NCBI RefSeq assembly: GCF_036365525.1
Contig: NW_027142279.1
Coordinates: forward strand, 744,001 to 808,000
Length of the DNA: 64,000 bases
From: Heterodontus francisci
Lineage: Eukaryota
Direction: 5' to 3'
In this document: positions 7,829 to 36,205 of the stretch, in pieces
Layout of the letters: each line of letters starts with the position of its first letter
How positions within the stretch are numbered: the first letter of the stretch is position 1
Made by a program: the position numbers and the translations under genes
Notes under the pieces: generated by a model
What the model was told of the DNA's origin: nothing
Seen by the model: only the letters and a program-made list of their open reading frames with translations
Databases searched by the model: none

Positions 7829-7855
7829 TCAGTCAAACCTTTTGCTGTAAGACGT
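7829..7855 (-). CDS. TRBC: TCR beta constant exon 4 (cytoplasmic tail TSYSKRFD*)
   Basis: Polypyrimidine tract + CAG acceptor, phase 0 matching exon 3, then TGA. Confidence 0.85.
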   Translation of the reverse strand, partial: TSYSKRFD

Positions 7856-7889
7856 CTGGTATATGATAAAAAAAAGAGGGAGTTATTAT

Positions 7890-8430
7890 CGTCATGGAAT
7901 TATGGACTGATACAGAACAGAAGGAGGCCATTCGTCCGGCGTGCCTATACTGGCATTTTGAAAGAGCTGTCCAATTAGTCCCATTTCACAGTTCTTTCCC
8001 CTATAGCCCTGAGACTATTCCCTCCCCCACTACCTCCACCCCCTCAAACAAGTATTCATCCAATTCCCTCTTGAAAGTTACTACTGAATCAGCTTCCACC
8101 GCCCTTTCAGCCAGTGCATTCTCAACCACAACAACTCGCTGGCTCAAAATATATTTCTCACCTGCCCCTCTGCTCCCTTGGCTAATCACCTTACAGCTGT
8201 GTCCTTGGTTGGGCAATCCTGCTGCCTCTTTGAAGCTGTTACCCCATTCGCTGTCCTATCCAAACCCTTCATCATTGTGCACACCTCTATTAAATCTCTC
8301 CTTAACCTTCCCTGATCCAAGGAGAACAATCCCAACTTCCGTATTCTCCTCACATCACTGAGGTCCCTCAACACTGTTACCGTTCAAGTAAATCGCCCCT
8401 TCACCCTCTCCAATGACTCGACATCACTGT
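7890..8430 (-). mobile_element. CR1-type LINE 3' fragment in TRBC intron 3
   Basis: Minus ORFs with KLGLFSLDQGRLRRDLIEV and SQRVVVVENALAERAVEA. Confidence 0.75.
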
Positions 8431-8800
8431 CCTGACCAGATCATCATGTGCATGAATAATCGAGACGAACCATGCACATGCTCTTTCCTGCTCATGCATT
8501 CCTAACCTTGCATATAAAGTCTTGTAAAGTTACAATAAGTTCAATTATTTTCCAAGGGAAATTCCAGAACATTGACAATTGTGTTCAAATGGATTAAATT
8601 GGTTGGTTAGTGTTGTGGGCGCAGGAATGAATGGAAAGTGAATTGGTGTATTCCATCTGCGTGCAATAGGAATGCAAAACTAGGGCTCGTGAATATCGGA
8701 TAGTCACTCGTAATTTCAGTCTGGAATTCAGGAGAAACTTCTTTACCCAGTTTCACCATGACAATACCTATGTTAAGAACTTCAGTAATTTTAATCTTAC

Positions 8801-8907
8801 CTTAGTTTTCCAAGCAATTGTTGAGATGAAAATTGCATAAAAGATGCTTTTGCAGATGAGGATCAGGTATGTCAGTTTTGCTGTTGCCATGCTTTGGATT
8901 TTCGCCT
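8801..8907 (-). CDS. TRBC: TCR beta constant exon 3 (connecting peptide/transmembrane)
   Basis: AG/GT-bounded, 107 nt, (E)AKIQSMATAKLTYLILICKSIFYAIFISTIAWKTK, with the TCRβ TM Tyr...Lys...Tyr (CART) pattern. Confidence 0.95.
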
Positions 8908-9709
8908 CTGTAAAATAAATGTAACAGGAAATGTTGCAATCTCTGTTCTCTCAAGGCAAGAAATGCTACTGCGTGAAAATGTAATGTGTGTCAGTGAAGG
9001 AGCCCAATGTAAGGGTCGAGCTGCGAAAGCAGAACTGATCTCCCTTTGACGCAAGGAGCCCTGGGGTATTCCTTACTACAAATGGAGTTCAGCAATATGG
9101 CCGATCTGAATTGGGGCCGCTGTAACTTATGTGTCAGCTATGGCTCACGTATGTATCAGCTCTAGCTGAGTGGGTAACGCTCTCCTGTCTGAGTCGTACG
9201 ATTGTGGGTTCATGCCCCAGTCCAAAGACATGAACCCCATAATCCAGACTGACTCTCCCAGTGCCAGCAGACAGCGTGTGTGCTGCACTGCAACTTTGGA
9301 GGAACCTTCTTTGAGATGATGTGTTAAACTAATTTAACCTCTGGGAAGTGGAACTGTCCCTCTTATCTCCACGCCAGATTCACAGTATCAACTCCCAAGG
9401 AATTGTACGTTTTAAGACAGGTGTACACAGCTCCCTCCCCTCCCATCCCCAGGCGTCCCCTCTCCCTCATCACAGGGCAACATATTTCCCTGAGGTCGTG
9501 AACCCAAGAGGACCGTGAGGTTATATCATTCGACTAGGCTGGTCTCGAAATTCCAACGGCCTTTCCCTCCCAGAGGAGTTTTCTCATAAACTCGTTGTGC
9601 ATGATAGTATGTATAACTGTAAAACTACAGCTTGGAAATGTTGAAATGAGTATATACATGAAATGTCTGACACAGTAATAATTCCAGAATTATTGGTGAA
9701 TATTTTTTG

Positions 9710-10245
9710 AGTCATGGAGTCATTACAGCACGGAAAGAGGTCATTCGGCCCATCGAGTCCATGCAGGATCTCTACAGAGCAATCCAATCAGTCCAGCTCT
9801 CCCCTTCCATCTCCATTGCCCTGCAAGTTAATTACCCTCAACAGTCCGTCCAGTTTCCTTATGAAATCATTCATTATCGCCATTTCCACCACCCTCGTAG
9901 ACAGTGACTTCCAGGTCATTACCACTCGCTGCATAAAACACTTCTGCCTCACATCCCCCCCCAGTGCATCTTTTTCCCAAAGCCTGAAAACTGTGACCCC
10001 CCCCCCACAGTCCTTATGCCAGCAACTCATGGGGACAACTTTTCTTTGTCTACCTATTGCAAACCTGTCATAATCTTGTACAACTCTGTCAAATAGCCCC
10101 TCAATCTCCTTTCCTCCAAGGAGAACAACCCAGGTTCTCCAATGTAACTTTGTAGCTAAAATTCCTCATCTCTGGAACCATTGTGGTAAATCTCCTCTGC
10201 ACCCTCTCAAGGACCTTCACCTCCTTTACAAAGTGTGGAGACCAG
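9710..10245 (-). mobile_element. CR1-type LINE 3' fragment in TRBC intron 2
   Basis: WSPHFVKEVKVLERVQRRFT and FMQRVVMTWKSL motifs plus the 3' tail. Confidence 0.8.
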
Positions 10246-10273
10246 ATACAGATAGAAGCAGATAGATATTCAC

Positions 10274-10294
10274 CTTTACTTATACCGCACATTT
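10274..10294 (-). CDS. TRBC: TCR beta constant exon 2 (hinge with interchain Cys)
   Basis: ttttcccag|AAATGTGCGGTATAAGTAAAG|gtgaat, 21 nt, phase 1/1, (E)MCGISK. Confidence 0.9.
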
Positions 10295-10614
10295 CTGGGA
10301 AAAGAAAGAAAAATCAATAAACATTCAGCATCAGAATATTTTATGAAATCACTGTGTAAATGTAGATTATCACAATTGAGTCCCGCACTGTACTCTAATA
10401 TATTGAGAGTCATTTTAATTGAGTGTTTAACCATATCTTCCCCTTTGCACTACAATATTGTTCTATTTCATGAATTATTTAATTATTTATTGACTTACTG
10501 ATACATCTACTTGCTTATTCGTACTTTCATAAGAGCACAGGTACTATATAAATGCAACTTTCTGATTTCTTTGAAGCTGAAATAAAATGGTATTGGTCTC
10601 ACTAGTGTGCTTAC

Positions 10615-10965
10615 CTGCTTTGACAGCTAATGTTGAACTGCTTGTTGTAGGCACTGATTCGTTAGTGTAGAGATCTACTCTGCACTCAACGTTCTTGGAC
10701 CGAGCCCAATCTAGGGCGTCGAATCTCAGCCGGCTGCTGATGCTGTAAGATGTATTTTCTTTTGATAGGATGGCATTGAGATCAGTGTGAATGTTCGTGT
10801 CATTGGCATCTTTCTCCTTGCCATCGACAAGCCAGTGGATCTTGATGTTGTCGGGGTAGAAGTCGCTTACGAGGCAGACCACAGTGGCTTTTTTCTTTTC
10901 TCTAATCTCTTCGGGAGAGGGCTCAAAGACAGTAACTTTGGCAGGCCTAATCGTATCGTTTTCGC
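10615..10965 (-). CDS. TRBC: TCR beta constant exon 1 (Ig C1 domain)
   Basis: ENDTIRPAKVTVFEPSPEEIREKKKATVVCLVSDFYPDNIKIHWLVDG...YSISSRLR...ECRV...AVKA, bounded by tgcag| and |gtaag. Confidence 0.98.
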
Positions 10966-11058
10966 CTGCAGGAAAAGTAAATGGAGAGAATATGGATGAG
11001 TATGAAACCCGTCTTGAGAATTTTAAACCACCAAACAATATCAACCTTTCAATTCTAG

Positions 11059-11111
11059 CCAGAGCAGTTAATTTTGTGCCAACTCCAGAATAAACCTCTC
11101 TGTTTCCCGAA
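11059..11111 (-). pseudogene. TRBJ: Jβ2-18: SGNREVYSGVGTKLTAL, donor lost, in frame with Cβ
   Basis: J-like G-x-GTKLT motif; G|CTAG where G|GT is expected; degenerate RSS CACCGAT-12-GTAGAATCA. Confidence 0.75.
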
Positions 11112-11349
11112 CACCGATCAGTCATAAAACGTAGAATCAGTTTGCAACCTCGACCTGCTTTTGTACATTTTAACCCAAAGTGGCAGAAACTGATCATCTC
11201 AACCTCTTAGTCATTGAGTGAAGTACAAGTCTGTCTCACTATGAAAGAGGTTCTCCTGTCTATCTGAAAAGTGTTACCCTGAACTCTGGGCCAGCCTGTT
11301 CTCAATAACCAGGCTATCACTCACCTTGTCCCATTATCTAGAGCCCTTT

Positions 11350-14315: not shown

Positions 14316-14366
14316 CCGAAACGCTTAGCTTCGTGCCCCCTCCAGAATACTGTTCATATCCTGAAG
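14316..14366 (-). CDS. TRBJ: Jβ2-16 SGYEQYSGGGTKLSVS (Ser in place of J-Phe)
   Basis: GTGAG donor; RSS CACCATG-12-ACTAAAACT at 14367-14394. Confidence 0.88.
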
Positions 14367-15383: not shown

Positions 15384-15435
15384 CCAACACTGTTAATTTG
15401 GAACCGGGGCCAAAATGAAAGTTAGTAGTTACATC
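15384..15435 (-). CDS. TRBJ: Jβ2-15 DVTTNFHFGPGSKLTVL
   Basis: GTAAG donor; RSS CACAATG-12-CAGAAAACT. Confidence 0.93.
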
Positions 15436-16071: not shown

Positions 16072-16127
16072 CCAGAACTGTTAATCTTGTCCCATCGCCA
16101 AAGCGGAGAGGTGTGCTGTTTCCAGAA
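16072..16127 (-). CDS. TRBJ: Jβ2-14 SGNSTPLRFGDGTRLTVL
   Basis: GTATG donor; RSS CACAGTG-12-ATTAAAACT. Confidence 0.95.
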
Positions 16128-16684
16128 CACAGTGTTACAAAGCAGTATTAAAACTGCTGGGGACCAATGATTACACGATACTTCATCGAATGCTCTGACA
16201 CCTTTGAACAATTATAATTCAACCAATTGCAATGTGTAGATTTGTCTGTCCTTTTCTCCACCATTCCATTTTAAAGCAGAGAAATTATGGTAAAATTTGC
16301 TTAGACGTTCTTGGAGCTCTGTGCACAGTTCTGGTCTCCATATCCCTCGGTTAGACCACACTTGGATCACTGTGCACAGTTCTCGTCTTCATACATATTT
16401 ACCTATCAGGAAAGACTGAATAGCCTTTATGATAGATAAGAGAAGGCTTAGAGGTGACCTGAAAGAGGCGTCTAAGATTATGAAAGGGTTGGGGGGTTCC
16501 AGAGGGTAGACACAGAGAAGTCTGGTAACGTTGTCTTTGCAAAATTGTGCATCTTGGGATACAAATTTACTCAAGTTTTCCAGTATGTGGCCAGGTTTGT
16601 GAGTTTTGGCAGAATTACGAAGCAATGAATGAACACTTAGAGGGAATTAAATTTGAATATTGAGATCTATTCTTGTTCACCTAC

Positions 16685-16733
16685 CTAGAACGTAATCCCA
16701 GAGCCAAAGTAAGAGATCGAGGTCCCAGCTGCA
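16685..16733 (-). pseudogene. TRBJ: Jβ2-13 pseudogene (AAGTSISYFGSG, then ~7-nt deletion and stop)
   Basis: The FGSG frame runs ITF* into the donor; RSS CACAATA-12-TGTAAAACT. Confidence 0.8.
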
Positions 16734-16749
16734 CACAATATCACAGGCC

Positions 16750-18467: not shown

Positions 18468-18523
18468 CCAAAACTGTGAGCTTGGTCCCTTGGCCAAAAT
18501 ATAATGGTTCGGTCTTTCCATAA
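18468..18523 (-). CDS. TRBJ: Jβ2-12 YGKTEPLYFGQGTKLTVL
   Basis: GTATG donor; RSS CACAGTG-12-TACAAAACT. Confidence 0.95.
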
Positions 18524-19193: not shown

Positions 19194-19246
19194 CGAAAAC
19201 TACTAACTTGGTCCCATCGCCAAAAGTATAATCGTAGTTATTTGAG
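19194..19246 (-). CDS. TRBJ: Jβ2-11 SNNYDYTFGDGTKLVVF
   Basis: GTAGG donor; RSS CACAGTG-12-GTTAAAACT. Confidence 0.95.
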
Positions 19247-19754
19247 CACAGTGATGCCTGTCAGTGTTAAAACTCCCATCAAGTTAGAAATGCTAAAATG
19301 CACCGTCTTCGAAATGATGTACTCAAATTGTAGATTTACATACTATTAATGTGTGATGTAAAGACAGCGGCAATGCACCCTAGATATTGGACAGGAGAAC
19401 AAAAGGTTAGTTATAGGGCCTGGTGGAGGTTACAGAGACAGCGAGATTTGTCGGGATTGGAGGATGTTACAGGGATAAGGAGAGTTATAGAGGCTGGAGG
19501 CGGTTACAGGGATAGGGAGGTTTGTAGGGGCCGGAGGACGTTGCAGGGACAGGGAGACAGCGAGGCCTTGGGGTGAGTTGAAAACAAAGGTGAAAGATGT
19601 TTAAACCAAGATATTGCAGGTCCGGCTGCCAATATAAATCGGCGAGGTGATCCTGTGACCGAGAACATGATGTATTTTAGAGCATCTAATTTCGTCTGAG
19701 AATCTCAGGGATCCTCATTAACGAAAACAACAAAAGCTTCAGTTCTGTGCTCAC

Positions 19755-19807
19755 CTAAAACAATCAATTTTGTCCCGTCACCGAAGTAATACAGAGTATT
19801 TCCTGTA
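19755..19807 (-). CDS. TRBJ: Jβ2-10 TGNTLYYFGDGTKLIVL
   Basis: GTGAG donor; RSS CACAATG-12-AGTATAACT. Confidence 0.93.
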
Positions 19808-20864: not shown

Positions 20865-20917
20865 CCAACACAGTCAGTTTTGTCCCGTCACCGAAGAAAT
20901 ACTCGTAGCTTCCAGAA
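20865..20917 (-). CDS. TRBJ: Jβ2-9 SGSYEYFFGDGTKLTVL
   Basis: GTGAG donor; RSS CACAGTG-12-TACTAAACT. Confidence 0.95.
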
Positions 20918-21219
20918 CACAGTGTTTCAGCCCTGTTACTAAACTATACTGGTCCCTGAAAGGTTGCCGAATATTTGAGTGAATAATACAGCTCTTGTTT
21001 GTTTGTCCATGATCAGCTAAATGGGAGAAATTTTCCCTTCTTTAAACACAGATCCAGTTCAAGAATCAGTCTTTCTCCTTCTCTCTCTCTCTGTCTCTGT
21101 TTGTGTCTTAAATGCATTGGAAAAATGTCTTTCACCAATGAACCCGGAGCCTTAAACATCTTTCCGACCATTTCAGACAACATGCATTCTCAGAATTGGC
21201 CTAACATTCCTGGACTCAC

Positions 21220-21269
21220 CTGTCACAACTAACTTGGTACCGCTTCCGAAGTAATATTGATTGCCAGAA
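21220..21269 (-). CDS. TRBJ: Jβ2-8 SGNQYYFGSGTKLVVT
   Basis: GTGAG donor; RSS CACAGTG-12-AACAAAACC. Confidence 0.95.
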
Positions 21270-22343: not shown

Positions 22344-22395
22344 CTAAAACCACGAGGTTTGTGCCATCGCCAAATGTGTAGTCATTGTTCCCTGA
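22344..22395 (-). CDS. TRBJ: Jβ2-7 SGNNDYTFGDGTNLVVL
   Basis: GTAAC donor; RSS CACAATG-12-AACAAAGCT. Confidence 0.93.
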
Positions 22396-22828: not shown

Positions 22829-22886
22829 CCAGGACTGTTAACTTAGTGCCGTCTCCAAAATATGATAGCTGGGTACTTCCTGCACC
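22829..22886 (-). CDS. TRBJ: Jβ2-6 GAGSTQLSYFGDGTKLTVL
   Basis: GTGAG donor; RSS CACATCA-12-ACAAAAACA. Confidence 0.93.
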
Positions 22887-23436: not shown

Positions 23437-23493
23437 CCAATACTGTTAGAGCCGAACGTTCTCCAAAATGTAAAGGCTGGTAGCTCCCGCCTG
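23437..23493 (-). CDS. TRBJ: Jβ2-5 GGSYQPLHFGERSALTVL (FGER motif)
   Basis: GTGAG donor; weak RSS CACTATA-12-ACCAAAGAA. Confidence 0.82.
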
Positions 23494-23650
23494 CACTATA
23501 CTAAACAACAGTACCAAAGAACACACCTTTGGATAGACATATACACCGACAGAAAAGTAGCTACGTCGATAGATAAACATAAAGATGGATACACAGACCG
23601 ATACATTATGGATGATGGAACAATAGATGTTTATATAGACGGTAACGTAC

Positions 23651-23700
23651 CTAAAACAGTTAACTTGGTACCAGCTCCGAAGTAGTAAATATCAGAAGAG
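23651..23700 (-). CDS. TRBJ: Jβ2-4 SSDIYYFGAGTKLTVL
   Basis: GTACG donor; RSS CACAGAG-12-ATCAAAACC. Confidence 0.93.
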
Positions 23701-25241: not shown

Positions 25242-25291
25242 CTAAAACCACCAGTTTGGTCCCATCTCCGAAATATGCTTCTCTAGCATTA
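25242..25291 (-). CDS. TRBJ: Jβ2-3 NAREAYFGDGTKLVVL
   Basis: GTGAG donor; RSS CACAATG-12-CGCAAAATC. Confidence 0.93.
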
Positions 25292-25870
25292 CACAATGGT
25301 ATGGGGCTGTCGCAAAATCCCCCTCTAGTCTAGATTGTTAAGTCTATTCCATTGAAGTTCTGACTGTTTCAATGGCCCGTAAAGGGTGTTGGAACAGGGG
25401 GACAGGAGGTGGCTGTTCAGCCCTTCGAGCCTCTTCCACCATGCAGTTAGATCAGGGTTGTTCTGAATCTTAACTCCATCATCCCACCTTGGTTCTGTAA
25501 CTGTCAATACTTCTGTTTAACAAAAATCTAACAATCTTGAATTTGAACTTATCAATCGACGCCCAGCCTCAACAGCATATTATTTTGTTGTGGGGGGTGC
25601 GGGGAGAGTTCCTGATATCACCCCTGAACGGCTCGAATTTAAATTGTTCTGGACTCCCCCCAACCTGAAGAAGCAGTTTCTCTCTATCGATCCAACACCT
25701 CAAGCACCTCGATTATATCAGCCCTTTAATGATCTCGATTCAAGGGACTGTCAGCTTAGTCTGAGTAACCAAGTCCTCATGATTTAACCCCTTTCTGCAT
25801 CTAATATCTGAACTTACTCCCCGCATATAAACCTAGATGTTGATCTGATAGGAAGAACAGAGTCCCTTAC

Positions 25871-25918
25871 CGAAAACTGTTAACTTGGTCCCGTCGCCGA
25901 AGTAAGCTATGTTTCCTG
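25871..25918 (-). CDS. TRBJ: Jβ2-2 GNIAYFGDGTKLTVF
   Basis: GTAAG donor; RSS CACAGTG-12-TCATGAACT. Confidence 0.93.
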
Positions 25919-26279
25919 CACAGTGGCCTAAACCCAGTCATGAACTGGCCCGGGAACTGTTACCCTTGCAGCTGAACGGGTCTGTGCCGGGCGGTTTACC
26001 GTGGAACACATCACCAAGCGGGTGTCCCGTTGGACTGGTCTTTGCGAACCAGAAGGAAGGGCCAGTGTCGTCCCGGGGAGAGAAACACCGCGCCAAAGTG
26101 ACAAACGGATGCTTGTGGCAGGAGGGAAATTAGGCGCAATTCTCGGCGGTCATGAGACAGATCTAACCGGCTGCCTAACTCGTTAAACTGTCCGGGGAGG
26201 AGGGGGGGGGGGGCAGTAAGCTTGGAATGCACACAGCTAGACATGAAGGTAGAGAGAACAAAAGACCCCTTTATCTTAC

Positions 26280-26330
26280 CTAACACCGTCAGTTTGGTGC
26301 CGGTCCCGAAATTGAGTGGTGCTGTTGTCG
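26280..26330 (-). CDS. TRBJ: Jβ2-1 TTAPLNFGTGTKLTVL
   Basis: GTAAG donor; RSS CACATCA-12-ACACGAACC. Confidence 0.92.
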
Positions 26331-26851
26331 CACATCAGCAAATCATGTTACACGAACCCGGTCGAAAACAGTTTGCTAAAAGTGACCTGCTCAGCATTTA
26401 GGAAGCACTGGTCAAGACAATCAGGACACACAAAGCAGCTTACAGCCAATGAAGCAGTTTGTTTAGGAAGTGGTCACCACAGGGAGACAGAGCAACTGAT
26501 ATTGGACCAAGGAAGTCCCATCAAACAGCAGTGAAATTAATGAGCAGATCATTGTGATGTTGGTTGAGGGATCAATATTGGTCCCAAGACACCGGGGTGG
26601 TGTTTCAGGGGTAAAAGAGTAACCAGTTTTCACACAAATAACACAGTTATTCTCTTTTCCAGAGGAATGCTCTAGGTTATAAAGCTGGACCATTCTGAGG
26701 CATCTACAAGATTGAAAGGGCCCAGCTCCCGCCATAATCCAGAGGAGATGTTTATTCGTTTACTCTGTTGCCACTGCTCTTCTGCTGATCTTCCTCGAGG
26801 TGTGTAGAGCGAGGTTTTTGTACGGAGGCTGCATTGGATTCTATCACAGTG

Positions 26852-26864
26852 TCCCCCCTGTCCC
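26852..26864 (-). CDS. TRBD: Dβ2 GGGACAGGGGGGA
   Basis: 5' 12-RSS (heptamer 26865-26871, nonamer 26884-26892) and 3' 23-RSS (heptamer 26845-26851, nonamer 26813-26821). Core matches the conserved vertebrate TRBD1 GGGACAGGGGG; open in all three frames. Confidence 0.97.
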
Positions 26865-27029
26865 CACGGTGATAGACACTCATACAAAAAAGAACGCGAA
26901 TTTTGCAAGGCCCTGCTTCTTCAAAGACTCCCGAGGGCTTCACTTGGTGAAGTCAGTTTAGATTGAGCTGCTGAAAGTTTTTTAGTCCTTTGGACCATAA
27001 TTAAAGGCCGTTCATTCCGTCTCAAAACT

Positions 27030-27200
27030 GTTAGCAGGAACTGGAGGTGGCCATTCCGCCCCTTCTCAGCCTGCTACACAGGTGCAGCAAGAGGCCATTC
27101 AGCCCCTCTAGACCTTGTTACACAGGAAGAAGAGGAGGCCCATTCAGCCCCTCTTGAGCTGCTTACACAGTAACAGGCCCATTCATCCACTCAAGCCTCC
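27030..27200. repeat. ~4 degenerate copies of the 44-bp satellite unit upstream of Dβ2
   Basis: aggccattcagcccctc...tgttacacaggaa units, followed by a (CCTT)n tract. Confidence 0.75.
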
Positions 27201-28478
27201 TTCCTTTCCTCTACTTCCTTCCTTCCTTCCTTCCCTTCCGTCCTTCCGTCCTTCCTCCCTTCCTTCCTTTCATGGTTTTTTTCTTGCTTGCTTTCTCTCT
27301 TGCTTTCTCTCTCTCCATTCCATCTCTCTGTTGCACCCCTTCTCCCCTTCCCCCTCCCCCATCCCTTACCCGCTTCATGATCCGCATTCTCTCTTGTACA
27401 ACGTGCAGGACCTCAGGACATACCGGCCACGGGACCTCAAACAGAAGCCACTTACTCTAGACAGTAAATCGTTCACACTGCTATCTCTTATCTTATCACT
27501 CAGAGAGACCCATGTTTGCCAAACTAGTGCAAGTTTCCCAGGTGTCGTGTTGATGTGTGCGGTGCTGTTATCATTCCTGCAGATCTCATTGCACACCAAC
27601 CCCCATCGCCATGCACCTGACATCAGGGAGAAAGGAATAGAAGTTTAGATGGAGTAGGGTGGGGGTGGGGAGAGGAGGCTCGTGTTCAGTATCACCACTG
27701 GCTTGATGACACATTTCTGGGGGGATTCGAGCAATGTTTGAAAATGAATAATCCGCCCTCTGAGAAAATGGGTCAAAAAAGGAACTCCTTCCTTAACAAC
27801 ACTGTGGAAATACCTAAAACACATTGAACGCAGGCGTGACGCCAGCAAAATGATAATGTTGCTGGGCTAGTAATCCTGCAGCCCGGGCTAGTGTTCTGGT
27901 TGTGTGAATTCAAATGGCCGCAGATGGGATTTAAATTCAGCTGATTCATAAAAATCTGTCAGGGTGCCATGAAACTGTCGTCGATTGTCATAAAAACCCA
28001 TCTACCATCTTCTATGGGACTGCAAACCTGCAGCATGCAGTTGACTGTTAACTGCCCTCTGAAATTGCAAAGCACTCAGTTCAAGGGCAATTAGGGATGG
28101 GCAACAAATGTTGGCCTTGCCATCGATGCCCACATCCCATGACAAGAATAAAAACATGGCCTAACAAACCACTCAGAAGGCAATTATGGGTGGGCAATAA
28201 ATGCATCCCAGCACGAATTAACAATGACTTTTCCTGTTCATTTTTGTCTGTATTTTGCTCCCAATCTGTGCCTCTCTGCATATGGTTGCCTCCCTAGCCT
28301 TCTTCCACTCTCCACCTCGCCTTTCCTCTATGTTTAATTGTTTTAACCTTTGCTTCTTTACTGTAATGCTTACTGTTTATTTTTCCAAATTTCATGTTCT
28401 CTCCCCTTTCTTCAAACGGAAGGGAGCAAACTGCCCAACAGTTTCAGTGCTGATTGAGGCCACTGATATATTTCGACA

Positions 28479-28816
28479 CAGTGGCGCAGTGGTTAGCACC
28501 GCAGCCTCACAGCTCCAGGGACCCGGGTTCGATTCCGGGTACTGCCTGTGTGGAGTTTGCAAGTTCTCCCTGTGTCTGCGTGGGTTTTCTCCGGGTGCTC
28601 CGGTTTCCTCCCACAAGCCAAAAGACTTGCAGGTTGATAGGTAAATTGGCCATTATAAATTGTCACTAGTATAGGTAGGTGGTAGGGAAATATAGGGACA
28701 GGTGGGGATGTTTGGTAGGAATATGGGTTAGTGTAGGATTAGTATAAATGGGTGGTTGATGTTCGGCACAGACTCGGTGGGCCGAAGGGCCTGTTTCAGT
28801 GCTGTATCTCTAATCT
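28479..28816 (+). mobile_element. tRNA-derived V-SINE (HE1-like)
   Basis: Pol III A box GTGGCGCAGTGG, B box GGTTCGATTCC, V-domain tgtgtggagtttgc...ggtgctccggtttcctccc, and a LINE-type 3' tail. Absent at the paralogous sites ~22810 and ~32690. Confidence 0.88.
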
Positions 28817-28830
28817 AATATTCTACTCAC

Positions 28831-28888
28831 CCAGGACCGTTAACTTCGTGGCATCTCCAAAATATGATGGATGGTTACTTCCTGCTCC
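28831..28888 (-). pseudogene. TRBJ: Jβ1-9 GAGSNHPSYFGDATKLTVL, nonamer deleted
   Basis: FGDA motif; heptamer CACATCA and spacer present, but the ACAAAAAC seen in paralogs J2-6 and J1-5 is missing. Confidence 0.8.
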
Positions 28889-29409
28889 CACATCACCATG
28901 TCACAACATTCCTCAACAGTGTCCTGCTTATTTGCATTGTCCCGATCATTAATATTTGATATGGGCCTTTGAGTGACATAGGCCAAAGTAAACTCATAAA
29001 CTAACCAGGGTGTTTGGCAATTAAAACTAGCAACATTCCCAATACTGGCTCTGCATCAATGTATGGACCAGTTCGTCAGATGTCCACAGAAACAGCTCTG
29101 ACAATATTGGAAAATTTTACTTGGAGTTCGTCATAATTATTAAGTAAGTTGTGCATGTAGGATGGGGACCTATTAGTTCAGTTAGCTAGATGGTTCACGT
29201 GTGATTCAGAGCAAGGTCAACAGCAGGGGTTCAGTTATCGTCTTGTTCTGACGAAAGTAACGGGAAACCGCCTTACCTACCTTTTTCCCTTGTCATTCTC
29301 ATCTCTCCTGCTGGAGAAAAGGAGCACAGAGCCATGGACAGAACATCTGCATGACACAGGCAATATGAAACCAGCCATCCTGGCTTAATCGAATAAACAT
29401 GTAACTCAC

Positions 29410-29466
29410 CCAAAACTGTTAGAGTCCAGCCTTCCCCAAAATGTAGAGTCTGGATGTTCCCGCCTA
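29410..29466 (-). CDS. TRBJ: Jβ1-8 GGNIQTLHFGEGWTLTVL
   Basis: GTGAG donor; RSS CACTATA-12-ACCAAAACA. Confidence 0.85.
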
Positions 29467-29625
29467 CACTATACTAAACAACAGTACCAAAACACAGCGT
29501 TGGGTAGACAGGTACAGTCTCAAACAAGTAATGTATCTATATCTAAACACAAAGATGGATGCACAGATACATTGTGGATCGATCGAACAATGGATATTTG
29601 CACATTTATGTAGATGGGATATTAC

Positions 29626-29660
29626 CTAAAACTTAGATCCAGTTCCGATTCAGCAGAGCA
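29626..29660 (-). pseudogene. TRBJ: Jβ1-7 relic (deleted paralog of J2-4/J1-3)
   Basis: Donor and flanks align with 23651-23730 (tacctaaaac...ccagttccga...atccctg...aaaacctctca) with internal deletions and no heptamer. Confidence 0.65.
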
Positions 29661-29949
29661 AAACCTAGATCCCTGAATAAAACCTCTCAACTCTCTGTGG
29701 TTCTATCCCAAGAGAGCCTTTCACAACAATGGAGAACCGACAAGTACAGGAATATTGGCTGACAGCAGCACGAGAGCATAAATTGACCGTTCAGCCCTTC
29801 GAGTAGGATCCGACATGCAAAAAGATCATGTATCTTCGTATCGTCAAGGTGGATGGAAAGAAAGGTGCAGAGCTGAGTGGTTAAGTGCACAGCTCTCAAT
29901 GGTGGATTGATGGAAATCGGACAGTCCAGAATTTCAGGATCACAAAGAT

Positions 29950-30170
29950 CTCGGAGAGTTGTAGAGGCTGGAGGAGGTTACAGAGATAGGAAGGGTTGTC
30001 GGGGCTGGAGGAGGTTACAGAGATAGGGAGGGATGTAGGGGCATGGAGGAGGTTATAGACATAGGGAGGGTTGTCGGGACTGGAGGTGGTTACAGACATA
30101 GAGAGGGTTGTAAGGGACTGGAGGAGGTTACAGGGATAGGGAGGGTTGTAGGGTGCTGGAGGAGGTTGAG
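29950..30170. repeat. ~37-bp minisatellite (GGGGCTGGAGGAGGTTACAGAGATAGGGAGGGTTGTA), ~6 copies
   Basis: Direct tandem copies; a degenerate relative lies at 19410-19570. Confidence 0.85.
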
Positions 30171-31916
30171 GCGCTTTTAAAAAACTCCTTCATGGGATGT
30201 GGGCGTCGATGACAAGGCCAGCATTTGTTACCCATCCCTAGTTGCCCTTGACAACTGCGTGGCTATTTCAGAAAGCAGTTACGAGTAAAGCAAAATAGTT
30301 AATAGGTAGAATGAGGTAGAAGTCTTGTTTCAGCTATACAAAGCCCTGGTTACACCACATCTGGAGTTCCTCTGAGCATTTATGGGCACCAGACATTAGG
30401 AAGGATATGCTGGTCTTGGGGGAAGTGTAATGTAGATTAAACAGACTGATACCTGGACGCCAAGGGTTAAATTGCAAGGAAAGATTCGACATTTCCTATT
30501 CTTTGGAAAAGAGAAGGTTAAAGGGTGGTTTGAGCAAAGTTTTCAAGGTATTAAGGGGAATGCATGATGTAGATGGAGAGAAACGATCTCCATTGGTTGT
30601 GCAGTCTAGATCTCCGGGACAGAGTTTAAGAATTAGAGCCAGAACTTTTCAGGCATGAAATTAGAAAACATCTTTTCACATAAAGGATGGTAGAAGTTTG
30701 GAACTCTCTTCTGCTGGAACAATTGTCAATTTTAAATCTCAAATTGATAGATTTTTGTTAACCATAGCTATTAAGGGATTATGGGGCAATGGGGGTAGAT
30801 GGAGTTAGGTCACTGATCAGTCATGATCGCATTGATTGGCAGAACAGACTCGAGGGGCCGAATGGACTACTCCTGCTCCTGTGTACCGATGATCCTATGT
30901 TCCTGTAACTTCTATTTAAACATAGAGTCAGCATTCTGCTTCAGTTAGAGTGTCCCAAATTCTGACAACTCTGAGTGAAAAGGAATCTAGTAATTGTCCT
31001 TGTAGATCTTTTGTCAATGATTTTAAATATCTGACCTTTGTTTATTGACCCATCCACCAGTAGAAATAATTTCCCCTTCAAGTAATTGTCCAGTCCCCCT
31101 TTTGAAAGTTACTATTGAGTCTGTTTGCACCACCCTTTCAGGCAGCGCATTCCAGATAACAACACACCGCATAATTGTTTTATTCTTCATATCACCCCTG
31201 TTTATTTTGTCAATTACCTTAACTCTGTGCCCTTTGTTTACCAACGCTTCGAGCATTGGAAATTGTTTCTGAGCATGTACTGTGTCCAAAGCCTTCATTG
31301 CTTTGGACACCTCTGTCAAATCCCCCCTAAACTTTCTCTGCTCTAGTCTCTAGACGCAACTGAAGACCCTCATCGCTGGAACCAGTCGAATAAATCATTC
31401 GTGCAACCACTCTAAGGCCTTGACATCCATCCTAACATGTGACACCCACAATTCTCCAGCTGGGACCTAACCAGCGATTCATCGAGGTTCAGCTTAACTC
31501 CCTTGCTCAACTCCTCGTCAATCCTTCTTTAACGAAGGTACTTTCCAGCTTCCTCAACTCTTTATTCTAAATTTCTTGATTGTCACGTATTTGTCCCTGT
31601 ACCTCACTCCTATCATCAACTCGCATTACGCCGATTTAGCTACATTAGGGACTGGATTAGGCCATTCAACCTCTGATATCCAAGGTACTTATCACATGTC
31701 GATTTCCACATGCACAATACGTCTCTAGTTTGTTTCAGGAAATATTCCATATGGGGCTCGGAAGTAATGCATGAAGCCGGAACACAAATACAAGGTGTAT
31801 GTTTCTATATAAGGTCCTCAGATCCACAACTAGGTTTGAATAATTTTAAATTTCAACTAGACATCCCTCTGATTCCACTTTCCTTTAAAGAGCTAATTCG
31901 ATTCTATCTCACTTAC

Positions 31917-31968
31917 CTAAAACCATGAGTTTTGAATTACCCCCAAAAGTATAACCATCGTTGCCTGA
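31917..31968 (-). pseudogene. TRBJ: Jβ1-6 SGNDGYTFGGNSKLMVL, likely non-rearranging
   Basis: Heptamer CGCAATG (invariant CAC broken), FGGN motif, intact GTAAG donor; paralog of J2-7. Confidence 0.75.
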
Positions 31969-32708
31969 CGCAATGTTACACTTTTGTATCAGAACTCGCG
32001 TTTCTTCAACTCGATACACAATAGTTAATGAACATAGTTGGAACATTTTGCCTTGTGTTATATTCATTATTCCACCCTATTGCTCTTTATCTTATATTCT
32101 GTTACAATTGATCTCCTTGTCTCTGTCTCTTTTTCACTGTTTTAAATCTAATTTCCCATCTCCCTCCAGTTTTGTCTGCTGTTTGCTCTCCATCTGGAGT
32201 TAAGAAGAATGGGAGATGATCTTCTGGGAAATTCTAAGATTCTGAGGGCGCTTGACAGGGTAAAGGCTGAGAGAATGTTCCCATGTAGAATTAAAGGGCA
32301 CAGTTTCAGAATGAGGGGTCGCTCATTTAGGACGGAGTGGAGAAGGAATGTCTTCCATCAGGGAGTCGTGAATCTTTGGAATTCCCTCCTCCAGAGCGCT
32401 GTGGAGACTGAGCCCGTGAATGCATTCAAACTGAGATAGAGAGCGGAGCCAAGGATTATGGAGAACAGGTAGGAAAGAGGGATCGAGGCCAACATCAGAT
32501 CAGCCATGATCTCTGGTTGCAAATTCCTCTCTCACCAGCCCTCCTCCAATCTCCTACATTTAGCTATTTACATTCTTGCTTCTTCAATGCAATGCTTACT
32601 CTTTTGCCTGTTTTCACATTCTCTCGCCTTTCTTTAAATTGAAGAGAGTAAACTAGTCGACGTTTTCAATGCTAGTAAGAGACGTATTTTGACTAACATC
32701 TCACTTAC

Positions 32709-32766
32709 CCTGGACAGTTAATTTAGTGCCATCTCCAAAATACATAGGTTGAATACTCCCTGCTCC
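32709..32766 (-). CDS. TRBJ: Jβ1-5 GAGSIQPMYFGDGTKLTVQ
   Basis: GTAAG donor; RSS CACATCA-12-ACAAAAACA. Confidence 0.92.
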
Positions 32767-33110
32767 CACATCATCACCTCACATCACAAAAACATTCCCC
32801 AACTCTCTTCTGGAAGAAAAGAAACTCACTGGGCCATTCCTTAATATTTGATAGTGGCCTCTGGTTAACGCAAGCTAACTGTAAGTTAATGTAAACTCGT
32901 GGACTAACCAGGCAGTTTGCAGTTATAACTAACAGAATTCCCAAGACTGTCTGCCCCGTCTATATGTGGACCCGTTCATCAGTTATCCACCGTGGCAATC
33001 CTGACAATAGGAGATTTTCTCTAAGTCCCTCACAATTATTCATTCAATCCTTCTTGCAAGATGTTTACAGGTGACCCTTGCTTCACTGAAAACAAAGAAA
33101 CTGAACTCAC

Positions 33111-33167
33111 CCAAAATCGTCAACGTGGACACGTCCCCAAAATGTAGCAGGTTGGTATACCCGCCCG
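33111..33167 (-). CDS. TRBJ: Jβ1-4 GGYTNLLHFGDVSTLTIL (FGDV motif)
   Basis: GTGAG donor; RSS CACTGCA-12-ACCAAAATA. Confidence 0.8.
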
Positions 33168-33382
33168 CACTGCACTAAACAACAATACCAAAATACAACG
33201 ATGGGTAGACAGATGTCTAGACAAACAAATAGATAGATAGGTGGACAAACAGACAGACAGATGGATCCACAGTCCAACAAATAGATAGGTACATTGATAG
33301 ATAGATAGATAAATAGATAGACTTACAGATGAAAAGATGTATTTACATAGATAAATATATACATGTGCAAACATAATCTTAC

Positions 33383-33432
33383 CTAAAACAGTGAGTTTAG
33401 TCCCAGCTCCGAAATAATAAATGTCACCAGAG
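33383..33432 (-). CDS. TRBJ: Jβ1-3 SGDIYYFGAGTKLTVL
   Basis: GTAAG donor; RSS CACAATG-12-ATTAAAACA. Confidence 0.93.
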
Positions 33433-34937
33433 CACAATGATAAACTCATGTATTAAAACATCACCTGTCTTTGAGCCCTTTCCCGAAGTAGCCCCTCATA
33501 ATAAGGGAGAACCGACAAGTATAAGGAAAATTTGTCCATAGGAACATAGCAACTGGGGAACAGGAGTTGACCATTCAGCCCTTCGTGCTTATTCCGACAT
33601 TTAATTAGATTATAAATTATTTGTACCATAACCCCATCGACCTGCCTTCTTGGTTCCATAACCATTAGCATCTTTGCCGATCAAAAAATAATCAACCACA
33701 CATTTGAAATTTTCAGTTGACCCCTCAGCTTTCTGTGGGAGAGATTTCTGGATTCCACGGGGCATTTTGGAAACAAGTCCTTCTTGACATCACTCCTGAA
33801 TGGTCTAGCTATCAGTGTATGATTTTGCTCTCTTGTTCTGGACCCATCACACCAGAGGAAATATCAGATCCTACCATTATCTTAAACACATCAATTGGAT
33901 CACCCCTGAATCTCAAATTCTCAATTTACTGCAATCCTACTTTAAACAACACATCGTCATAAATTAAACTCTTTCAATTCCGTTATTATCCTGGGTGAAT
34001 GAGGAAAGGTCATGGGGCCCTTGACACCTCATTGTCCACTGGATATGGGTAGCCCACCAGTTCGATTAGTAACTTGAAAATACTGGGTCTCAAAACGGTT
34101 TCATTCATTGCCGCTCGAGGTTAAGAGGGAATAGATAGAATTATACAGAATTTACAACACACAAACAGGCCATTCAGCCCATCTGCTCCATGCCAGTGTT
34201 TACACTCCACTTGAGATTCCTCTCATCCCCTTCGTTCAATTCAATTTTTTTTTATCCAATCTACTTTTTTAAACCCACTCCTTGTAGTATTGAGTTCCAC
34301 ATTCGCACCACTGTCTGGGTAAAGAAATTTCTCCTGAATTCCCTATTGAATTTATTACTGACTGTCTGACATTTATGCTCTCCCCGTTCTGGTCTCCCCA
34401 CAAGTGGAAAAAACTTCGGTGTGTCTACCCGATCGAAACCCCTTTCAAAATCGTACAGACCTCTACCAGGTCACCCCTCAAACTTCACTGCTCTCGAGAA
34501 CGGAGTCCCAGTCTGTCCGACCTTCCCCAATAGTTATAACAGTTTGGGCAGCACAGCTGTTAATCTGTATTGACTTACCTTATCCAGAGCCTCTACATCA
34601 TTTCTTTTATAATATGCAGACCAGAACTGCATACTGAACGATGCAATCTGACATTTTTCGTTCTATGTCTGTGTCCTCTTGTTCTTCTCTTACAAGCGCA
34701 ATCATTCTATTTGTATCTACATTGCTGTTTGTTCTGTTTATTTTAGAGACCCTCCCTTATGTATCCACTCAAACCCCTTCCCTACAGTGAAACGAATTCG
34801 GCAGTTGTAGGTCTCCATTTGTAAGCTGAAGAATTGTAATTAATTCACCAAATTTCTATATTTTCACCCCCTCGACCACCTCACGTGAATTCCCAAATTG
34901 AATCAACTTTTCCAGTATTAGGAATGCATTCACTCAC

Positions 34938-34987
34938 CTAAAACCACCAGTTTGGTCCCATCTCCAAAATATGCTTCGGTATTGGAG
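34938..34987 (-). CDS. TRBJ: Jβ1-2 SNTEAYFGDGTKLVVL
   Basis: GTGAG donor; RSS CACACTG-12-CACAAAATC. Confidence 0.93.
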
Positions 34988-35621
34988 CACACTGGTATGG
35001 GGCTGTCACAAAATCCCCTTCAATCCCCTTAGATTGTTAAGTCTGTTCCATTGAAGTTCCTATTATGTAAATGACCGTAAAGGTCGTAGGAACATGGGGA
35101 CAGGAGGTGGCCATTCAGCCCTTCGAGCCTGTTCCACCATTCAGTTAGTTCAGGGTTGATCTGACTCTTAACTCCATCATCCCTCCTTGGTTCTGCAACC
35201 CTCAATACTTTTGTTTTACACAGGTCGATCAATCTTGGATTTGAATTTATCAATTGACCCCCAGTCTCAACTGATTGTTTTGGGGAGGGAAGGAGGGGGG
35301 AGAGAGTTCCTGATTTCCACTACCCTTTGTGTGAAGAAGTGCTTCCTGATATCACCCCTGAAAGGTGATAATTTAAATTGTTCTGGACACCCCCCAACCT
35401 GAGAAAGCAGCTTCTCTCTCTATCTATCCAACACCTCAAACCCCTCCATTATATCAGCCCTTAATGTTCTATATTCGAGGGACTGTCAGCTTAGTCTGAG
35501 TAACCAGTCCTCATGAGTTAACCCTTTAATGTATCTAATATCTGAACATTACTCCTGGTGATTTTTAAACTAGATATAGATTCTGATCGATAGGAGGAAC
35601 AGAAATACAGAGTCACCTTAC

Positions 35622-35669
35622 CCAACACTGTCAACTTGGTCCCATCGCCGAAGTAAGCTATGTCTTTTG
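35622..35669 (-). CDS. TRBJ: Jβ1-1 KDIAYFGDGTKLTVL
   Basis: GTAAG donor; RSS CACGATG-12-TCATGAACA. Confidence 0.9.
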
Positions 35670-36051
35670 CACGATGCTCCAAACTCAGTCATGAACAGAC
35701 CCGGGAGATGTTCCCCTTGTAACTGAACGAGACAGGGCGGGGTGGTTCACAGGCCAGGGTCATATTGGACTGGTCTTTGCAAACCAGAAAGAAGGGCCAG
35801 CGTCGTCCACACAAATGTAATCACATTTCCACACAAATGACACACAGTTCTTCTCTTTTCCTCAGGATTGTTCTAGGTTTTCAGGCTGGACCACTCTGAG
35901 ACATCTTTAAGATGAAAAGGGCCCAGTTCCCGTTATAATCCAGGGCCATGTTGACTCGTTTACTCTGTTGTCACTGCTCTTCTGCTGATCCTCCACCAGG
36001 TGTGTAGAGCAAGGTTTTTGTACGGAGGTTGCATTGGATTTTATCACCGTG

Positions 36052-36064
36052 TCCCTGCTGTTCC
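36052..36064 (-). CDS. TRBD: Dβ1 GGAACAGCAGGGA
   Basis: 5' 12-RSS (heptamer 36065-36071, nonamer 36084-36092) and 3' 23-RSS (heptamer 36045-36051, nonamer 36013-36021). Flanks are paralogous to Dβ2; open in all three frames. Confidence 0.96.
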
Positions 36065-36205
36065 CACAGTGATAGACACTCACACAAAAAATAGGAACGC
36101 AAAACTTACATGTCGCCGCCACTTGAAGTGCTCCCGAGGTCTTCACCTGGTGACGGCAGTTGAGACTGAGGTGCTGAAATTTAGTTAGACCTTTGCAGCA
36201 CAATT

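What the first reader, a model, noticed from the sequence alone, without database searches (positions are those of the whole stretch)
7829..36092. Two Dβ-Jβ clusters share a single Cβ (V-D1-J×9-D2-J×18-C)
Seen: two D segments with full 12/23 RSS, each followed by its own J array, and no C exon between J1-9 and Dβ2. Known: mammalian TRB duplicates whole D-J-C cassettes. Inference: the duplication here left out C. J1 rearrangements would have to splice 18-25 kb to Cβ, across Dβ2 and the downstream J donors. Nested D1-J then D2-J secondary rearrangement (receptor editing) would be possible, as in a Jα-like array. 27 J elements is a large Jβ set.
Basis: partly seen in the sequence, partly recalled or inferred. 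Interest (0 to 1): 0.8.

Follow-up and report, generated by a model that had tools for sequence, protein, structure and literature searches.

The report
Two D-J clusters, one constant gene
In this horn shark T-cell-receptor beta region, the block holding a D segment and its J segments was copied in tandem long ago without the constant gene, and RNA shows the upstream copy still splices across the downstream copy to the single constant gene, which is a modest variation on a well-known design.

Summary
On the minus strand the window reads: 3 V genes, a 10.7 kb satellite, D1, 9 J-like elements, D2, 18 J-like elements, then one intact four-exon C-beta gene. Both D segments have a complete 12-RSS and 23-RSS.

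No C-like sequence lies between the clusters. That interval is made of paralogous DNA plus a SINE-like insert.

The layout is an old tandem duplication, with blocks 74-79% identical. Its junction maps to about 27619. The distal breakpoint lies inside the J array, so C was most likely never part of the copied unit.

The upstream cluster is in use:
- Two RNA-derived contigs join the J1.1 splice donor (35622) to C exon 1 (10965), across a 24.7 kb germline intron.
- A horn shark cDNA-derived protein in the database carries a J closest to J1.2.

Only about 18 of the 27 J-like elements look functional.

A multi-D, single-C TRB is in print for a skink, and I found no shark TRB map in seven literature searches. 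This scan had already noted the same layout on other pieces of this genome.

Verdict: real and working; a new variant of a known kind, of moderate interest.

The parts
60425..60733 (-). V-beta segment with 23-RSS (CACAGTG/23/ACAAAAACC)
   Evidence: Pfam V-set, E 7.7e-10. Cys104 and the RSS were found; the heptamer is at 60439-60445.
58875..59207 (-). V-beta segment with 23-RSS (CACAGCG/23/ACAAAAACC)
   Evidence: Pfam V-set, E 3e-11.
55838..56212 (-). V-beta segment nearest the D-J region, with 23-RSS
   Evidence: Pfam V-set, E 1.8e-17. It is 85% identical to the V of the horn shark cDNA protein P0004. RSS.
36207..46916 (.). 44-bp satellite, 243.5 copies, directly upstream of D1
   Evidence: TRF; self-BLAST.
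46737..47354 (-). Proximal end of the upstream duplication unit, homologous to 27020-27619
   Evidence: 74% identity over 622 nt; 253/328 identical, ending at 47354.
36013..36092 (-). D1 with 5' 12-RSS and 3' 23-RSS; coding 36064-36052
   Evidence: Read directly; RSS scan.
35622..35669 (-). J1.1: FGDG, heptamer CATCGTG, donor GTAAGG
   Evidence: Two X1 contigs join its donor to C exon 1.
35470..35500 (-). J relic (TQTKLTV; no FGxG, no donor); paralogue of the relic at 25761
34938..34987 (-). J1.2: FGDG, CAGTGTG, donor GTGAGT
   Evidence: It is the best match of the J in cDNA protein P0004, 18/21. X3 contig record 20 aligns only to 34937-34982.
33383..33432 (-). J1.3: FGAG, CATTGTG
33111..33167 (-). 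J1.4: FGDV, non-canonical, doubtful
   Evidence: The copy in gene model P0005 reads FGDG.
32709..32766 (-). J1.5: FGDG, nonamer TGTTTTTGT, heptamer TGATGTG
31917..31968 (-). J1.6: FGGN, heptamer CATTGCG, likely defective
29410..29466 (-). J1.7: FGEG, heptamer TATAGTG; second copy of the J1.4/J2.5 type
28831..28893 (-). J1.8: FGDA, nonamer lost, likely a pseudo-J; second copy of the J1.5/J2.6 type
28478..28820 (+). SINE-like insert (tRNA-like box; naming it a SINE is my recollection) filling the only unaligned part of the inter-cluster interval
   Evidence: Read; every frame has stops. ARAGORN calls no tRNA.
27619..28283 (-). Tail of the upstream unit, homologous to 20065-20750
   Evidence: 479/734 identical, starting exactly at 27619 / 20065.
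27619..27619 (.). Tandem-duplication junction, where the tail of unit A abuts the head of unit B
   Evidence: Both alignments meet at this base.
27020..27619 (-). Head of the downstream unit; includes a 2.8-copy seed of the 44-bp satellite at 27049-27170
26813..26892 (-). D2 with 5' 12-RSS and 3' 23-RSS; coding 26864-26852
   Evidence: Read directly; RSS scan.
26280..26330 (-). J2.1: FGTG; no partner in cluster 1
25871..25918 (-). J2.2: FGDG, CACTGTG; paralogue of J1.1
   Evidence: 41/48 identical to J1.1.
25735..25765 (-). J relic (TQTKLTV)
25242..25291 (-). J2.3: FGDG; paralogue of J1.2
23651..23700 (-). J2.4: FGAG; paralogue of J1.3
23437..23493 (-). J2.5: FGER, non-canonical
22829..22886 (-). 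J2.6: FGDG; paralogue of J1.5
22344..22395 (-). J2.7: FGDG; paralogue of J1.6
21220..21269 (-). J2.8: FGSG, CACTGTG
20865..20917 (-). J2.9: FGDG, CACTGTG; last J inside the duplicated unit
19755..19807 (-). J2.10: FGDG; first J outside the duplicated unit
19194..19246 (-). J2.11: FGDG
18468..18523 (-). J2.12: FGQG
16681..16733 (-). J2.13: pseudo-J, FGSG followed by an in-frame stop
16072..16127 (-). J2.14: FGDG
15384..15435 (-). J2.15: FGPG
14316..14366 (-). J2.16: SGGG instead of FGGG, doubtful
11050..11111 (-). J2.17: J-like (SGVG), no splice donor, poor RSS, about 85 nt upstream of C exon 1
10615..10965 (-). C-beta exon 1 (C1-set Ig domain)
   Evidence: Pfam C1-set, E 2.5e-19. 100% identical to horn shark cDNA protein P0004. 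Acceptor read, donor.
10274..10294 (-). C-beta exon 2 (connecting peptide, MCGISK)
8801..8907 (-). C-beta exon 3 (transmembrane)
   Evidence: tblastn with P0004 97% and P0006 100%.
7829..7855 (-). C-beta exon 4 coding part (TSYSKRFD, then stop)

Best explanation
This is one unit of the horn shark TCR-beta locus. A roughly 7.5 kb block was copied once, in tandem and long ago. The block held the upstream flank, a short satellite seed, the D segment and the first nine or so J segments. Its distal breakpoint lay inside the J array, so the constant gene was never in the copied unit.

The result is V(n) - D1 - J cluster 1 - D2 - J cluster 2 - a single C-beta.

The upstream copy changed afterwards:
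- Its satellite grew to 10.7 kb.
- Two J segments were copied again.
- A SINE-like element inserted.
- Some J segments decayed.

Both D segments keep full 12/23 signals.

A J of cluster 1 reaches the constant gene by ordinary splicing from its own donor to C exon 1. The intron is 18-25 kb and contains D2 and cluster 2, much as unused J segments sit in the J-C intron of TCR-alpha or Ig-kappa.

Shown here: the anatomy, the paralogy, the junction, J1.1-to-C splicing in RNA, and a cDNA protein with a J1.2-type J.

Inferred: that V-D1-J1 joins give working chains at a useful rate, that V-to-D2J2 can replace a failed V-D1-J1 join, and that D1 can join D2.
For: Anatomy:
- Both D segments have complete RSSs and are the only two D-like sites in the window.
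- There are 9 + 18 J-like elements, all on one strand.
- There are 3 V genes with 23-RSS.
- There is one intact four-exon C gene.

Age of the duplication:
- Paralogous blocks are 75.3% identical over 1567 nt, 78.8% over 561 nt and 74.0% over 622 nt. That is far too diverged for an assembly duplicate or a haplotig.

Junction:
- 27300-27619 aligns to 47030-47354.
- From the same base, 27619 onward aligns to 20065 onward.

Inter-cluster interval:
- It consists of head homology, tail homology, a homologue of 22580-22814, and a 340-nt SINE-like insert with stops in every frame.
- No C-like tblastn hit at E<=1 with 16 shark proteins.

Conservation in six positional J pairs:
- Coding 252/322 (78%) and RSS 136/168 (81%).
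- 200-nt flanks 837/1296 (65%) and 856/1331 (64%).

Expression:
- In run X1, two contigs end their match at the J1.1 donor and continue with 24 letters that occur once in the window, at 10941-10964. These are the first bases of C exon 1.
- J2.2, the paralogue, is only 41/48 identical to J1.1, so it would fail the 95% cut-off.
- An X3 contig of 313 nt matches only 34937-34982, which is J1.2 up to its donor, with 69 and 198 unmatched letters on either side.
- P0004, 'T-cell receptor homolog [Heterodontus francisci]', is 100% identical in C exon 1. Its J matches J1.2 at 18/21 and J2.3 at 16/21.
- NCBI gene model P0005, from another copy, strings J1.4-like and J1.6-like exons to the same C.
Against: - The two J1.1-C contigs could be sterile germline transcripts that start near D1, not products of V(D)J joining. 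X1 contigs also cover unrearranged DNA at 35.9-36.0 kb and 30.2-34.9 kb.
- The flanks of the X3 J1.2 contig were not printed, so its V and C ends are inferred.
- This genome holds at least three near-identical C-beta genes: the window, P0005 and P0006. X1 contigs differ from the window by 1-5%. The transcripts may therefore come from a sister copy or another haplotype.
- Four of the 9 cluster-1 J elements look defective. J1.1 has a weak nonamer and the heptamer CATCGTG.
- Part of the 'tail' homology (about 28041-28230) is repeat-derived, so the distal breakpoint is likely but not proven.
- No DNA reads were laid across 26-29 kb, so the assembly there was checked only by internal logic.
Confidence: 0.85

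Rival explanations
1. Assembly artefact: the second D-J cluster is a falsely duplicated haplotype, or a C gene between the clusters was lost through a mis-join.
For: - No reads were laid across 26-29 kb.
- The window has an N gap elsewhere, at 2264-2501.
- The region is rich in repeats.
Against: - The copies are only 65-79% identical, not the 98% or more expected of haplotigs.
- The interval is fully accounted for by paralogous DNA plus one SINE-like insert.
- The junction is a single clean point.
- RNA contigs splice J1.1 directly to the C exon 1 found downstream of cluster 2.
- Earlier scan notes report the same layout on other pieces of this genome. These are unchecked leads.
Confidence: 0.04
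2. The layout is real, but cluster 1 is a decaying relic. It is transcribed and spliced only as sterile germline RNA and adds little or nothing to the receptor repertoire.
For: - Four of 9 cluster-1 J elements are defective.
- The J1.1-C contigs may be germline transcripts.
- A 10.7 kb satellite separates D1 from the V genes.
Against: - D1 keeps both RSSs.
- Five cluster-1 J segments keep FGxG, a donor and a GTG-ending heptamer.
- J coding and RSS sequence is better conserved than the flanks: 78-81% against 64-65%.
- cDNA protein P0004 has a V, a junction and a J closest to J1.2.
- The X3 contig matches J1.2 only from 5 nt inside its 5' end to its donor, as a rearranged transcript would.
Confidence: 0.1
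3. C was once present between the clusters, as in a mammal-like D-J-C / D-J-C arrangement, and was deleted later.
For: Whole D-J-C cassettes are the usual duplication unit in tetrapods: cattle in PMC2685407 (passages) and axolotl in PMC12529555 (passages).
Against: - The tail of the upstream unit is homologous to DNA between J2.9 and J2.10, not to DNA downstream of C.
- That tail abuts the head of the downstream unit at one base.
- No relic of any C exon is present.
Confidence: 0.03

Closest known systems
Mammalian TRB D-J-C region (two cassettes in human and mouse, three in cattle)
   Same: - V genes lie upstream.
- Each D has a 5' 12-RSS and a 3' 23-RSS and is followed by its own J array.
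- The D core GGGACAGGGGG is conserved.
- A downstream D-J cluster can serve for a second rearrangement attempt (this last point is recalled, not tested).
   Different: - Here no C lies between the clusters.
- Cluster-1 J segments must splice 18-25 kb across D2 and cluster 2.
- The duplicated unit ended inside the J array. In cattle the unit was C-D-J (PMC2685407, passages).
Skink Tiliqua rugosa TRB: three TRBD, six TRBJ, a single TRBC (PMC11754216, passages)
   Same: There are several D segments with 12/23 RSS and only one constant gene.
   Different: - The order of the D and J segments is given in a figure that I could not see.
- It has far fewer J segments.
- It is a distant lineage, so an independent event.
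- No breakpoint or splicing evidence appears in the passages I read.
Duck, zebrafish and catfish TRB: D-(J)n-C1-(J)n-C2 (PMC5278385, abstract and passages; catfish abstract)
   Same: A departure from the whole-cassette rule, produced by a partial duplication of the D-J-C region.
   Different: It is the converse case. There J-C was copied without D; here D-J was copied without C.
J arrays of TRA and IGK (recalled)
   Same: The rearranged J splices to a single C, and the unused downstream J segments are carried in the intron.
   Different: Those loci have no D segment inside the intron.
TRD locus with several D segments (recalled)
   Same: The 12/23 geometry allows D-to-D joining.
   Different: In TRD the D segments lie together upstream of all J segments. 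Here a J array lies between them.

Membership tests
TCR-beta (TRB) locus | D segment flanked by a 5' 12-RSS and a 3' 23-RSS, with a G-rich core | tested here: met
   Met by D1 and D2.
TCR-beta (TRB) locus | J segments with a 12-RSS, an FGxG motif and a splice donor | tested here: met
   18 of 27 J-like elements meet all three criteria.
TCR-beta (TRB) locus | V segments with a 23-RSS upstream, in the same orientation | tested here: met
   3 V genes.
TCR-beta (TRB) locus | C gene that matches known TCR-beta chains | tested here: met
   Exon 1 is 100% identical to P0004, 'T-cell receptor homolog [Heterodontus francisci]'. It is 52-62% identical to proteins named TCR beta chain in nurse shark, Mustelus and Pristiophorus. 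Pfam C1-set.
Mammal-type duplicated D-J-C cassettes | Each D-J cluster is followed by its own C gene | tested here: not met
   There is one C exon 1 in 64 kb and none between the clusters.
Multi-D, single-C TRB (as reported for the skink) | More than one TRBD and a single TRBC in one translocon | tested here: met
   Two D segments and one C. Whether the skink also interleaves D and J segments I could not see, because figures are not held.
Functional use of the upstream cluster | Transcripts that join a cluster-1 J to C | tested here: met
   J1.1 donor joined to C exon 1 in 2 contigs of X1.
Functional use of the upstream cluster | Productive V-D-J1 joins in T cells | tested here: inconclusive
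   One cDNA protein has a J1.2-type J at 18/21, and one X3 contig is consistent with such a join. No repertoire data were available.
Secondary rearrangement / D1-D2 joining | Joints V-D2J2 replacing V-D1J1, or V-D1-D2-J joints | not testable with these tools
   Only the RSS geometry is shown.

The most novel reading that the evidence does not exclude
The D-J copy without C is an old, selectively kept feature of horn shark (perhaps elasmobranch) TRB units. On this reading it gives each allele a second in-cis rearrangement attempt and allows V-D1-D2-J chains with long CDR3-beta. The 10.7 kb satellite that grew just upstream of D1 would act as a boundary element setting the order in which D1 and D2 are used. 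The same layout on sister copies would mean it predates the multiplication of the whole TRB unit.
Probability: 0.12. Interest if true: 0.6.

Novelty: new variant of a known kind. Interest (0 to 1): 0.4.

Why it matters
TRB loci are usually described as growing by whole D-J-C cassettes. This is a mapped case, in a cartilaginous fish, where the copied unit stopped short of C. It comes with RNA evidence that the upstream J segments still reach the single C by long-range splicing.

It adds a data point on how antigen-receptor loci are remodelled. It gives a natural system in which a D segment with live RSSs sits inside the J-C intron. It is also needed for correct annotation of horn shark TCR-beta repertoires, where J segments of both clusters must be in the reference.

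It does not change how the receptor is thought to work.

Tried and rejected
- More horn shark cDNAs: a V-exon protein search returned 1 hit among 8 candidates, a bamboo shark protein. No further horn shark cDNA was found, so J usage could not be tallied.
- C exon 1 alone found only 3 proteins, because of the length limits of the search. I repeated it with the contiguous genomic ORF and a region restriction, which gave 16 proteins.
- Literature: searches found no genomic map of a shark TRB D-J-C region. One search was badly aimed and useless. Two papers were not held: the Rast & Litman 1994 DOI and PMC3222143. PMC5931798 and PMC6795676 held nothing on the TRB layout.
- Supplements I could not see: PMC10322711 says it catalogued trb V, D, J and C elements of the bamboo shark in supplementary tables (passage). 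Those tables, and Figure 1A and Supplementary Table 6 of the skink paper, may bear on novelty.
- ARAGORN found no tRNA in the window, so the SINE label rests on reading the sequence and on recall.
- A third D segment: none found.
- A second C of the divergent type that earlier notes place below the window: no C-like hit at 1-7800 with the 16 proteins I had. I had no sequence of that type, so this is weak.
- Depth from read laying was not used to rank J segments, because the runs are contigs.
- The correct ones are D1 36064-36052 and D2 26864-26852.
C was searched as exon 1 alone or as the unspliced genomic ORF.

Full report
WHAT IS THERE

The locus lies on the minus strand.

A translated scan for [FW]GxG gave 33 matches on the minus strand, of which 19 have the look of TCR J segments (…YFGxGTKLTVLG followed by GT). 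None of the 14 plus-strand matches has that look.

I built a nucleotide profile from 18 of these. It gave 24 hits with E<1e-3. All are on the minus strand between 11060 and 35663, and the best plus-strand hit has E=0.099. Six of the 24 were new: 33152, 31935, 28872, 23477, 14355 and 11094.

Each was checked for RSS, motif and donor. Eighteen of the 27 (5 of 9 and 13 of 18) have FGxG, a GT donor in phase 1 and a heptamer ending in GTG.

The other nine:
- J1.4 reads FGDV.
- J1.6 reads FGGN and has the heptamer CATTGCG.
- J1.8 reads FGDA and has lost its nonamer.
- J2.5 reads FGER.
- J2.13 has an in-frame stop.
- J2.16 reads SGGG.
- J2.17 has no donor.
- Two are relics.

The two D segments were read directly:
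- D1: ATTTTTTGT / 12 / CACTGTG - GGAACAGCAGGGA - CACGGTG / 23 / ACAAAAACC, at 36092-36013.
- D2: CTTTTTTGT / 12 / CACCGTG - GGGACAGGGGGGA - CACTGTG / 23 / ACAAAAACC, at 26892-26813.

A scan of both strands for this architecture gave four hits. Two are these D segments and two are the end of a V gene.

Three V segments with 23-RSS lie at 60.4, 58.9 and 55.9 kb (Pfam V-set). Between the last V and D1 lies a 44-bp satellite of 243.5 copies, at 36207-46916.

C-beta has four exons:
- Exon 1: 10965-10615.
- Exon 2: 10294-10274.
- Exon 3: 8907-8801.
- Exon 4: 7855-7829, ending in the stop.

Exon 1 is a C1-set domain. It is 100% identical to the database protein P0004, 'T-cell receptor homolog [Heterodontus francisci]'. 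That supports the earlier scan notes that this is the horn shark.

IS A C MISSING BETWEEN THE CLUSTERS?

tblastn with C exon 1 finds it once in 64 kb. tblastn with 16 shark C-beta or TCR-beta proteins at E<=1 gives only J-like matches and weak stray matches between 26 and 29 kb.

The interval from D2 to J1.8 is fully explained:
- 27020-27619 is homologous to 46737-47354.
- 27619-28283 is homologous to 20065-20750.
- 28234-28478 is homologous to 22580-22814.
- 28478-28820 is a SINE-like insert with stops in all frames.

HOW IT AROSE

Self-comparison shows an old tandem duplication:
- 34274-35808 ~ 24612-26073: 75.3% over 1567 nt.
- 35826-36380 ~ 26627-27175: 78.8% over 561 nt; includes D and the start of the satellite.
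- 46737-47354 ~ 27020-27619: 74.0% over 622 nt.

The J segments pair by position: J1.1/J2.2, relic/relic, J1.2/J2.3, J1.3/J2.4, J1.4/J2.5, J1.5/J2.6 and J1.6/J2.7. J1.7 and J1.8 are a further copy of the J2.5 and J2.6 types. J2.1 has no partner.

A fine alignment shows that 27300-27619 matches 47030-47354 (253/328). From the very same base, 27619 onward matches 20065 onward (479/734). So unit A (27619-47354) and unit B (20065-27619) meet at one point.

The distal breakpoint, at about 20065, lies between J2.9 and J2.10. C, 9 kb further on, was therefore outside the copied block.

Caveat: about 190 nt of the tail is repeat-derived, so the breakpoint is likely, not certain.

The satellite has 2.8 copies in unit B (27049-27170) and 243.5 in unit A. 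It expanded after the duplication, or shrank in B.

In the six positional pairs, J coding (252/322, 78%) and RSS (136/168, 81%) are better kept than the 200-nt flanks (837/1296 and 856/1331, 64-65%). This fits continued constraint on both clusters.

IS CLUSTER 1 USED?

The run search returned three runs of one sample, kept as contigs and labelled RNA by guess. I laid them on 30101-36100.

- J1.1. Run X1 gave a loose end in two contigs. The match stops at 35621 and continues with 24 letters that occur once in the window, at 10941-10964. On the minus strand this reads …GTG TTG G|GC GAA AAC GAT ACG ATT AGG CCT GC. That is the J1.1 donor joined to the acceptor of C exon 1. It shows that X1 holds RNA-derived sequence and that a cluster-1 J is spliced to the single C across 24,656 nt of germline DNA. 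The paralogue J2.2 is only 41/48 identical, so it would not pass the 95% threshold.
- J1.2. A 313-nt contig of X3 matches only 34937-34982. This is J1.2 from 5 nt inside its 5' end to its donor, with 69 and 198 unmatched letters on either side (table 8). That is what a V-D-J-C transcript would give, but its flanks were not printed.
- cDNA. Protein P0004 has …YYCAAS GHPSD SNSEAYFGDGTKLVVLG ENDT… Its J matches J1.2 at 18/21 and J2.3 at 16/21.
- Gene model. NCBI model P0005, from another contig, strings J1.4-like and J1.6-like exons to the same C.

Against:
- The J1.1-C contigs may be sterile germline transcripts, since X1 also covers unrearranged DNA.
- X1 contigs differ from the window by 1-5%.
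- At least three near-identical C-beta genes exist: the window has VPTTSSS/IFYAIF, P0005 has VPATSSS/IFYTIF and P0006 has VPATSSS/IFYAIF. The RNA may come from a sister copy or another haplotype.

HOW IT MOST LIKELY WORKS

V-to-D1J1 joins are transcribed from the V promoter and spliced from the used J donor to C exon 1. D2 and cluster 2 are removed as intron. The splicing step is shown; the rest is inferred.

The RSS geometry allows three further joins:
- D1 to any J of either cluster.
- D1 to D2.
- After a V-D1-J1 join, a V-to-D2J2 join that deletes the first one.

This last is the second attempt known from the two-cluster mouse locus (recalled, not tested here).

WHAT IS KNOWN

- Whole D-J-C cassettes are the usual unit: cattle (PMC2685407, passages), axolotl with five (PMC12529555, passages) and salmonids with separate V-D-J-C loci (PMC10464911, passages).
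- Duck and zebrafish have D-(J)n-C1-(J)n-C2 (PMC5278385, abstract and passages). Catfish has one TRBD, 31 TRBJ and two TRBC (abstract in the listing).
[quoted passage not shown] The order is in a figure that I could not see.
- No paper with a genomic map of a shark TRB D-J-C region turned up in searches.

EARLIER NOTES OF THIS SCAN

Searches report the same D-J/D-J layout without C on other pieces of this genome (s1-874195, s1-872923, s1-874207). They also report further working C-beta genes 292 and 553 kb away on this piece, and an inverted, decayed second-type cassette just below the window. I did not test those. If they are right, this window is one of several sister units and the duplication predates their multiplication.

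VERDICT

This is a real, working, old partial duplication: a new variant of a known kind, of moderate interest.

Noticed in passing
window 36207-46916 and 27049-27170: A 44-bp satellite with 243.5 copies (10.7 kb) lies directly upstream of D1. The paralogous site upstream of D2 has only 2.8 copies, so the array changed in size after the duplication.
   Followed up: partly
window 11050-11111: A J-like element (…VYSGVGTKLTAL) with a poor RSS and no splice donor lies about 85 nt upstream of C exon 1. It is in the same reading frame as C exon 1, within an open frame (ORF 10544-11197).
   Followed up: partly
window 28478-28820 (+): A SINE-like insert with a tRNA-like box lies just downstream of J1.8. 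ARAGORN calls no tRNA there. Related short repeats are at 832-910, 20547-20608, 28041-28158 and 30182-30289.
   Followed up: partly
window 48269-48653: A 33-bp tandem repeat of 11.7 copies lies between the last V and the satellite. Its function is unknown.
   Followed up: no
window 19409-19557 and 29953-30167: Related 37-bp tandem repeats (78-86% identical) lie in J-J spacers of both clusters, at positions that are not paralogous by order.
   Followed up: no
window 30210-34911 (read-laying table 8): X1 contigs cover unspliced inter-J DNA at 95-99% identity, for example 15 differences in 535 nt. A second haplotype or a sister copy of this unit is transcribed, or DNA is present in the run.
   Followed up: no
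proteins P0005, P0006 (other contigs of the same species): Two NCBI gene models carry C-beta 99% identical to the window but with different residues (VPATSSS; IFYTIF or IFYAIF). The genome therefore holds at least three C-beta genes or alleles of this type. In P0005 the J1.4-type element reads FGDG, where the window has FGDV.
   Followed up: partly
window 2264-2501: An assembly gap (238 N) lies downstream of C. It is flanked by low-complexity AT-rich and AG-rich repeats at 2.6-5.3 kb. It was left untouched.
   Followed up: no
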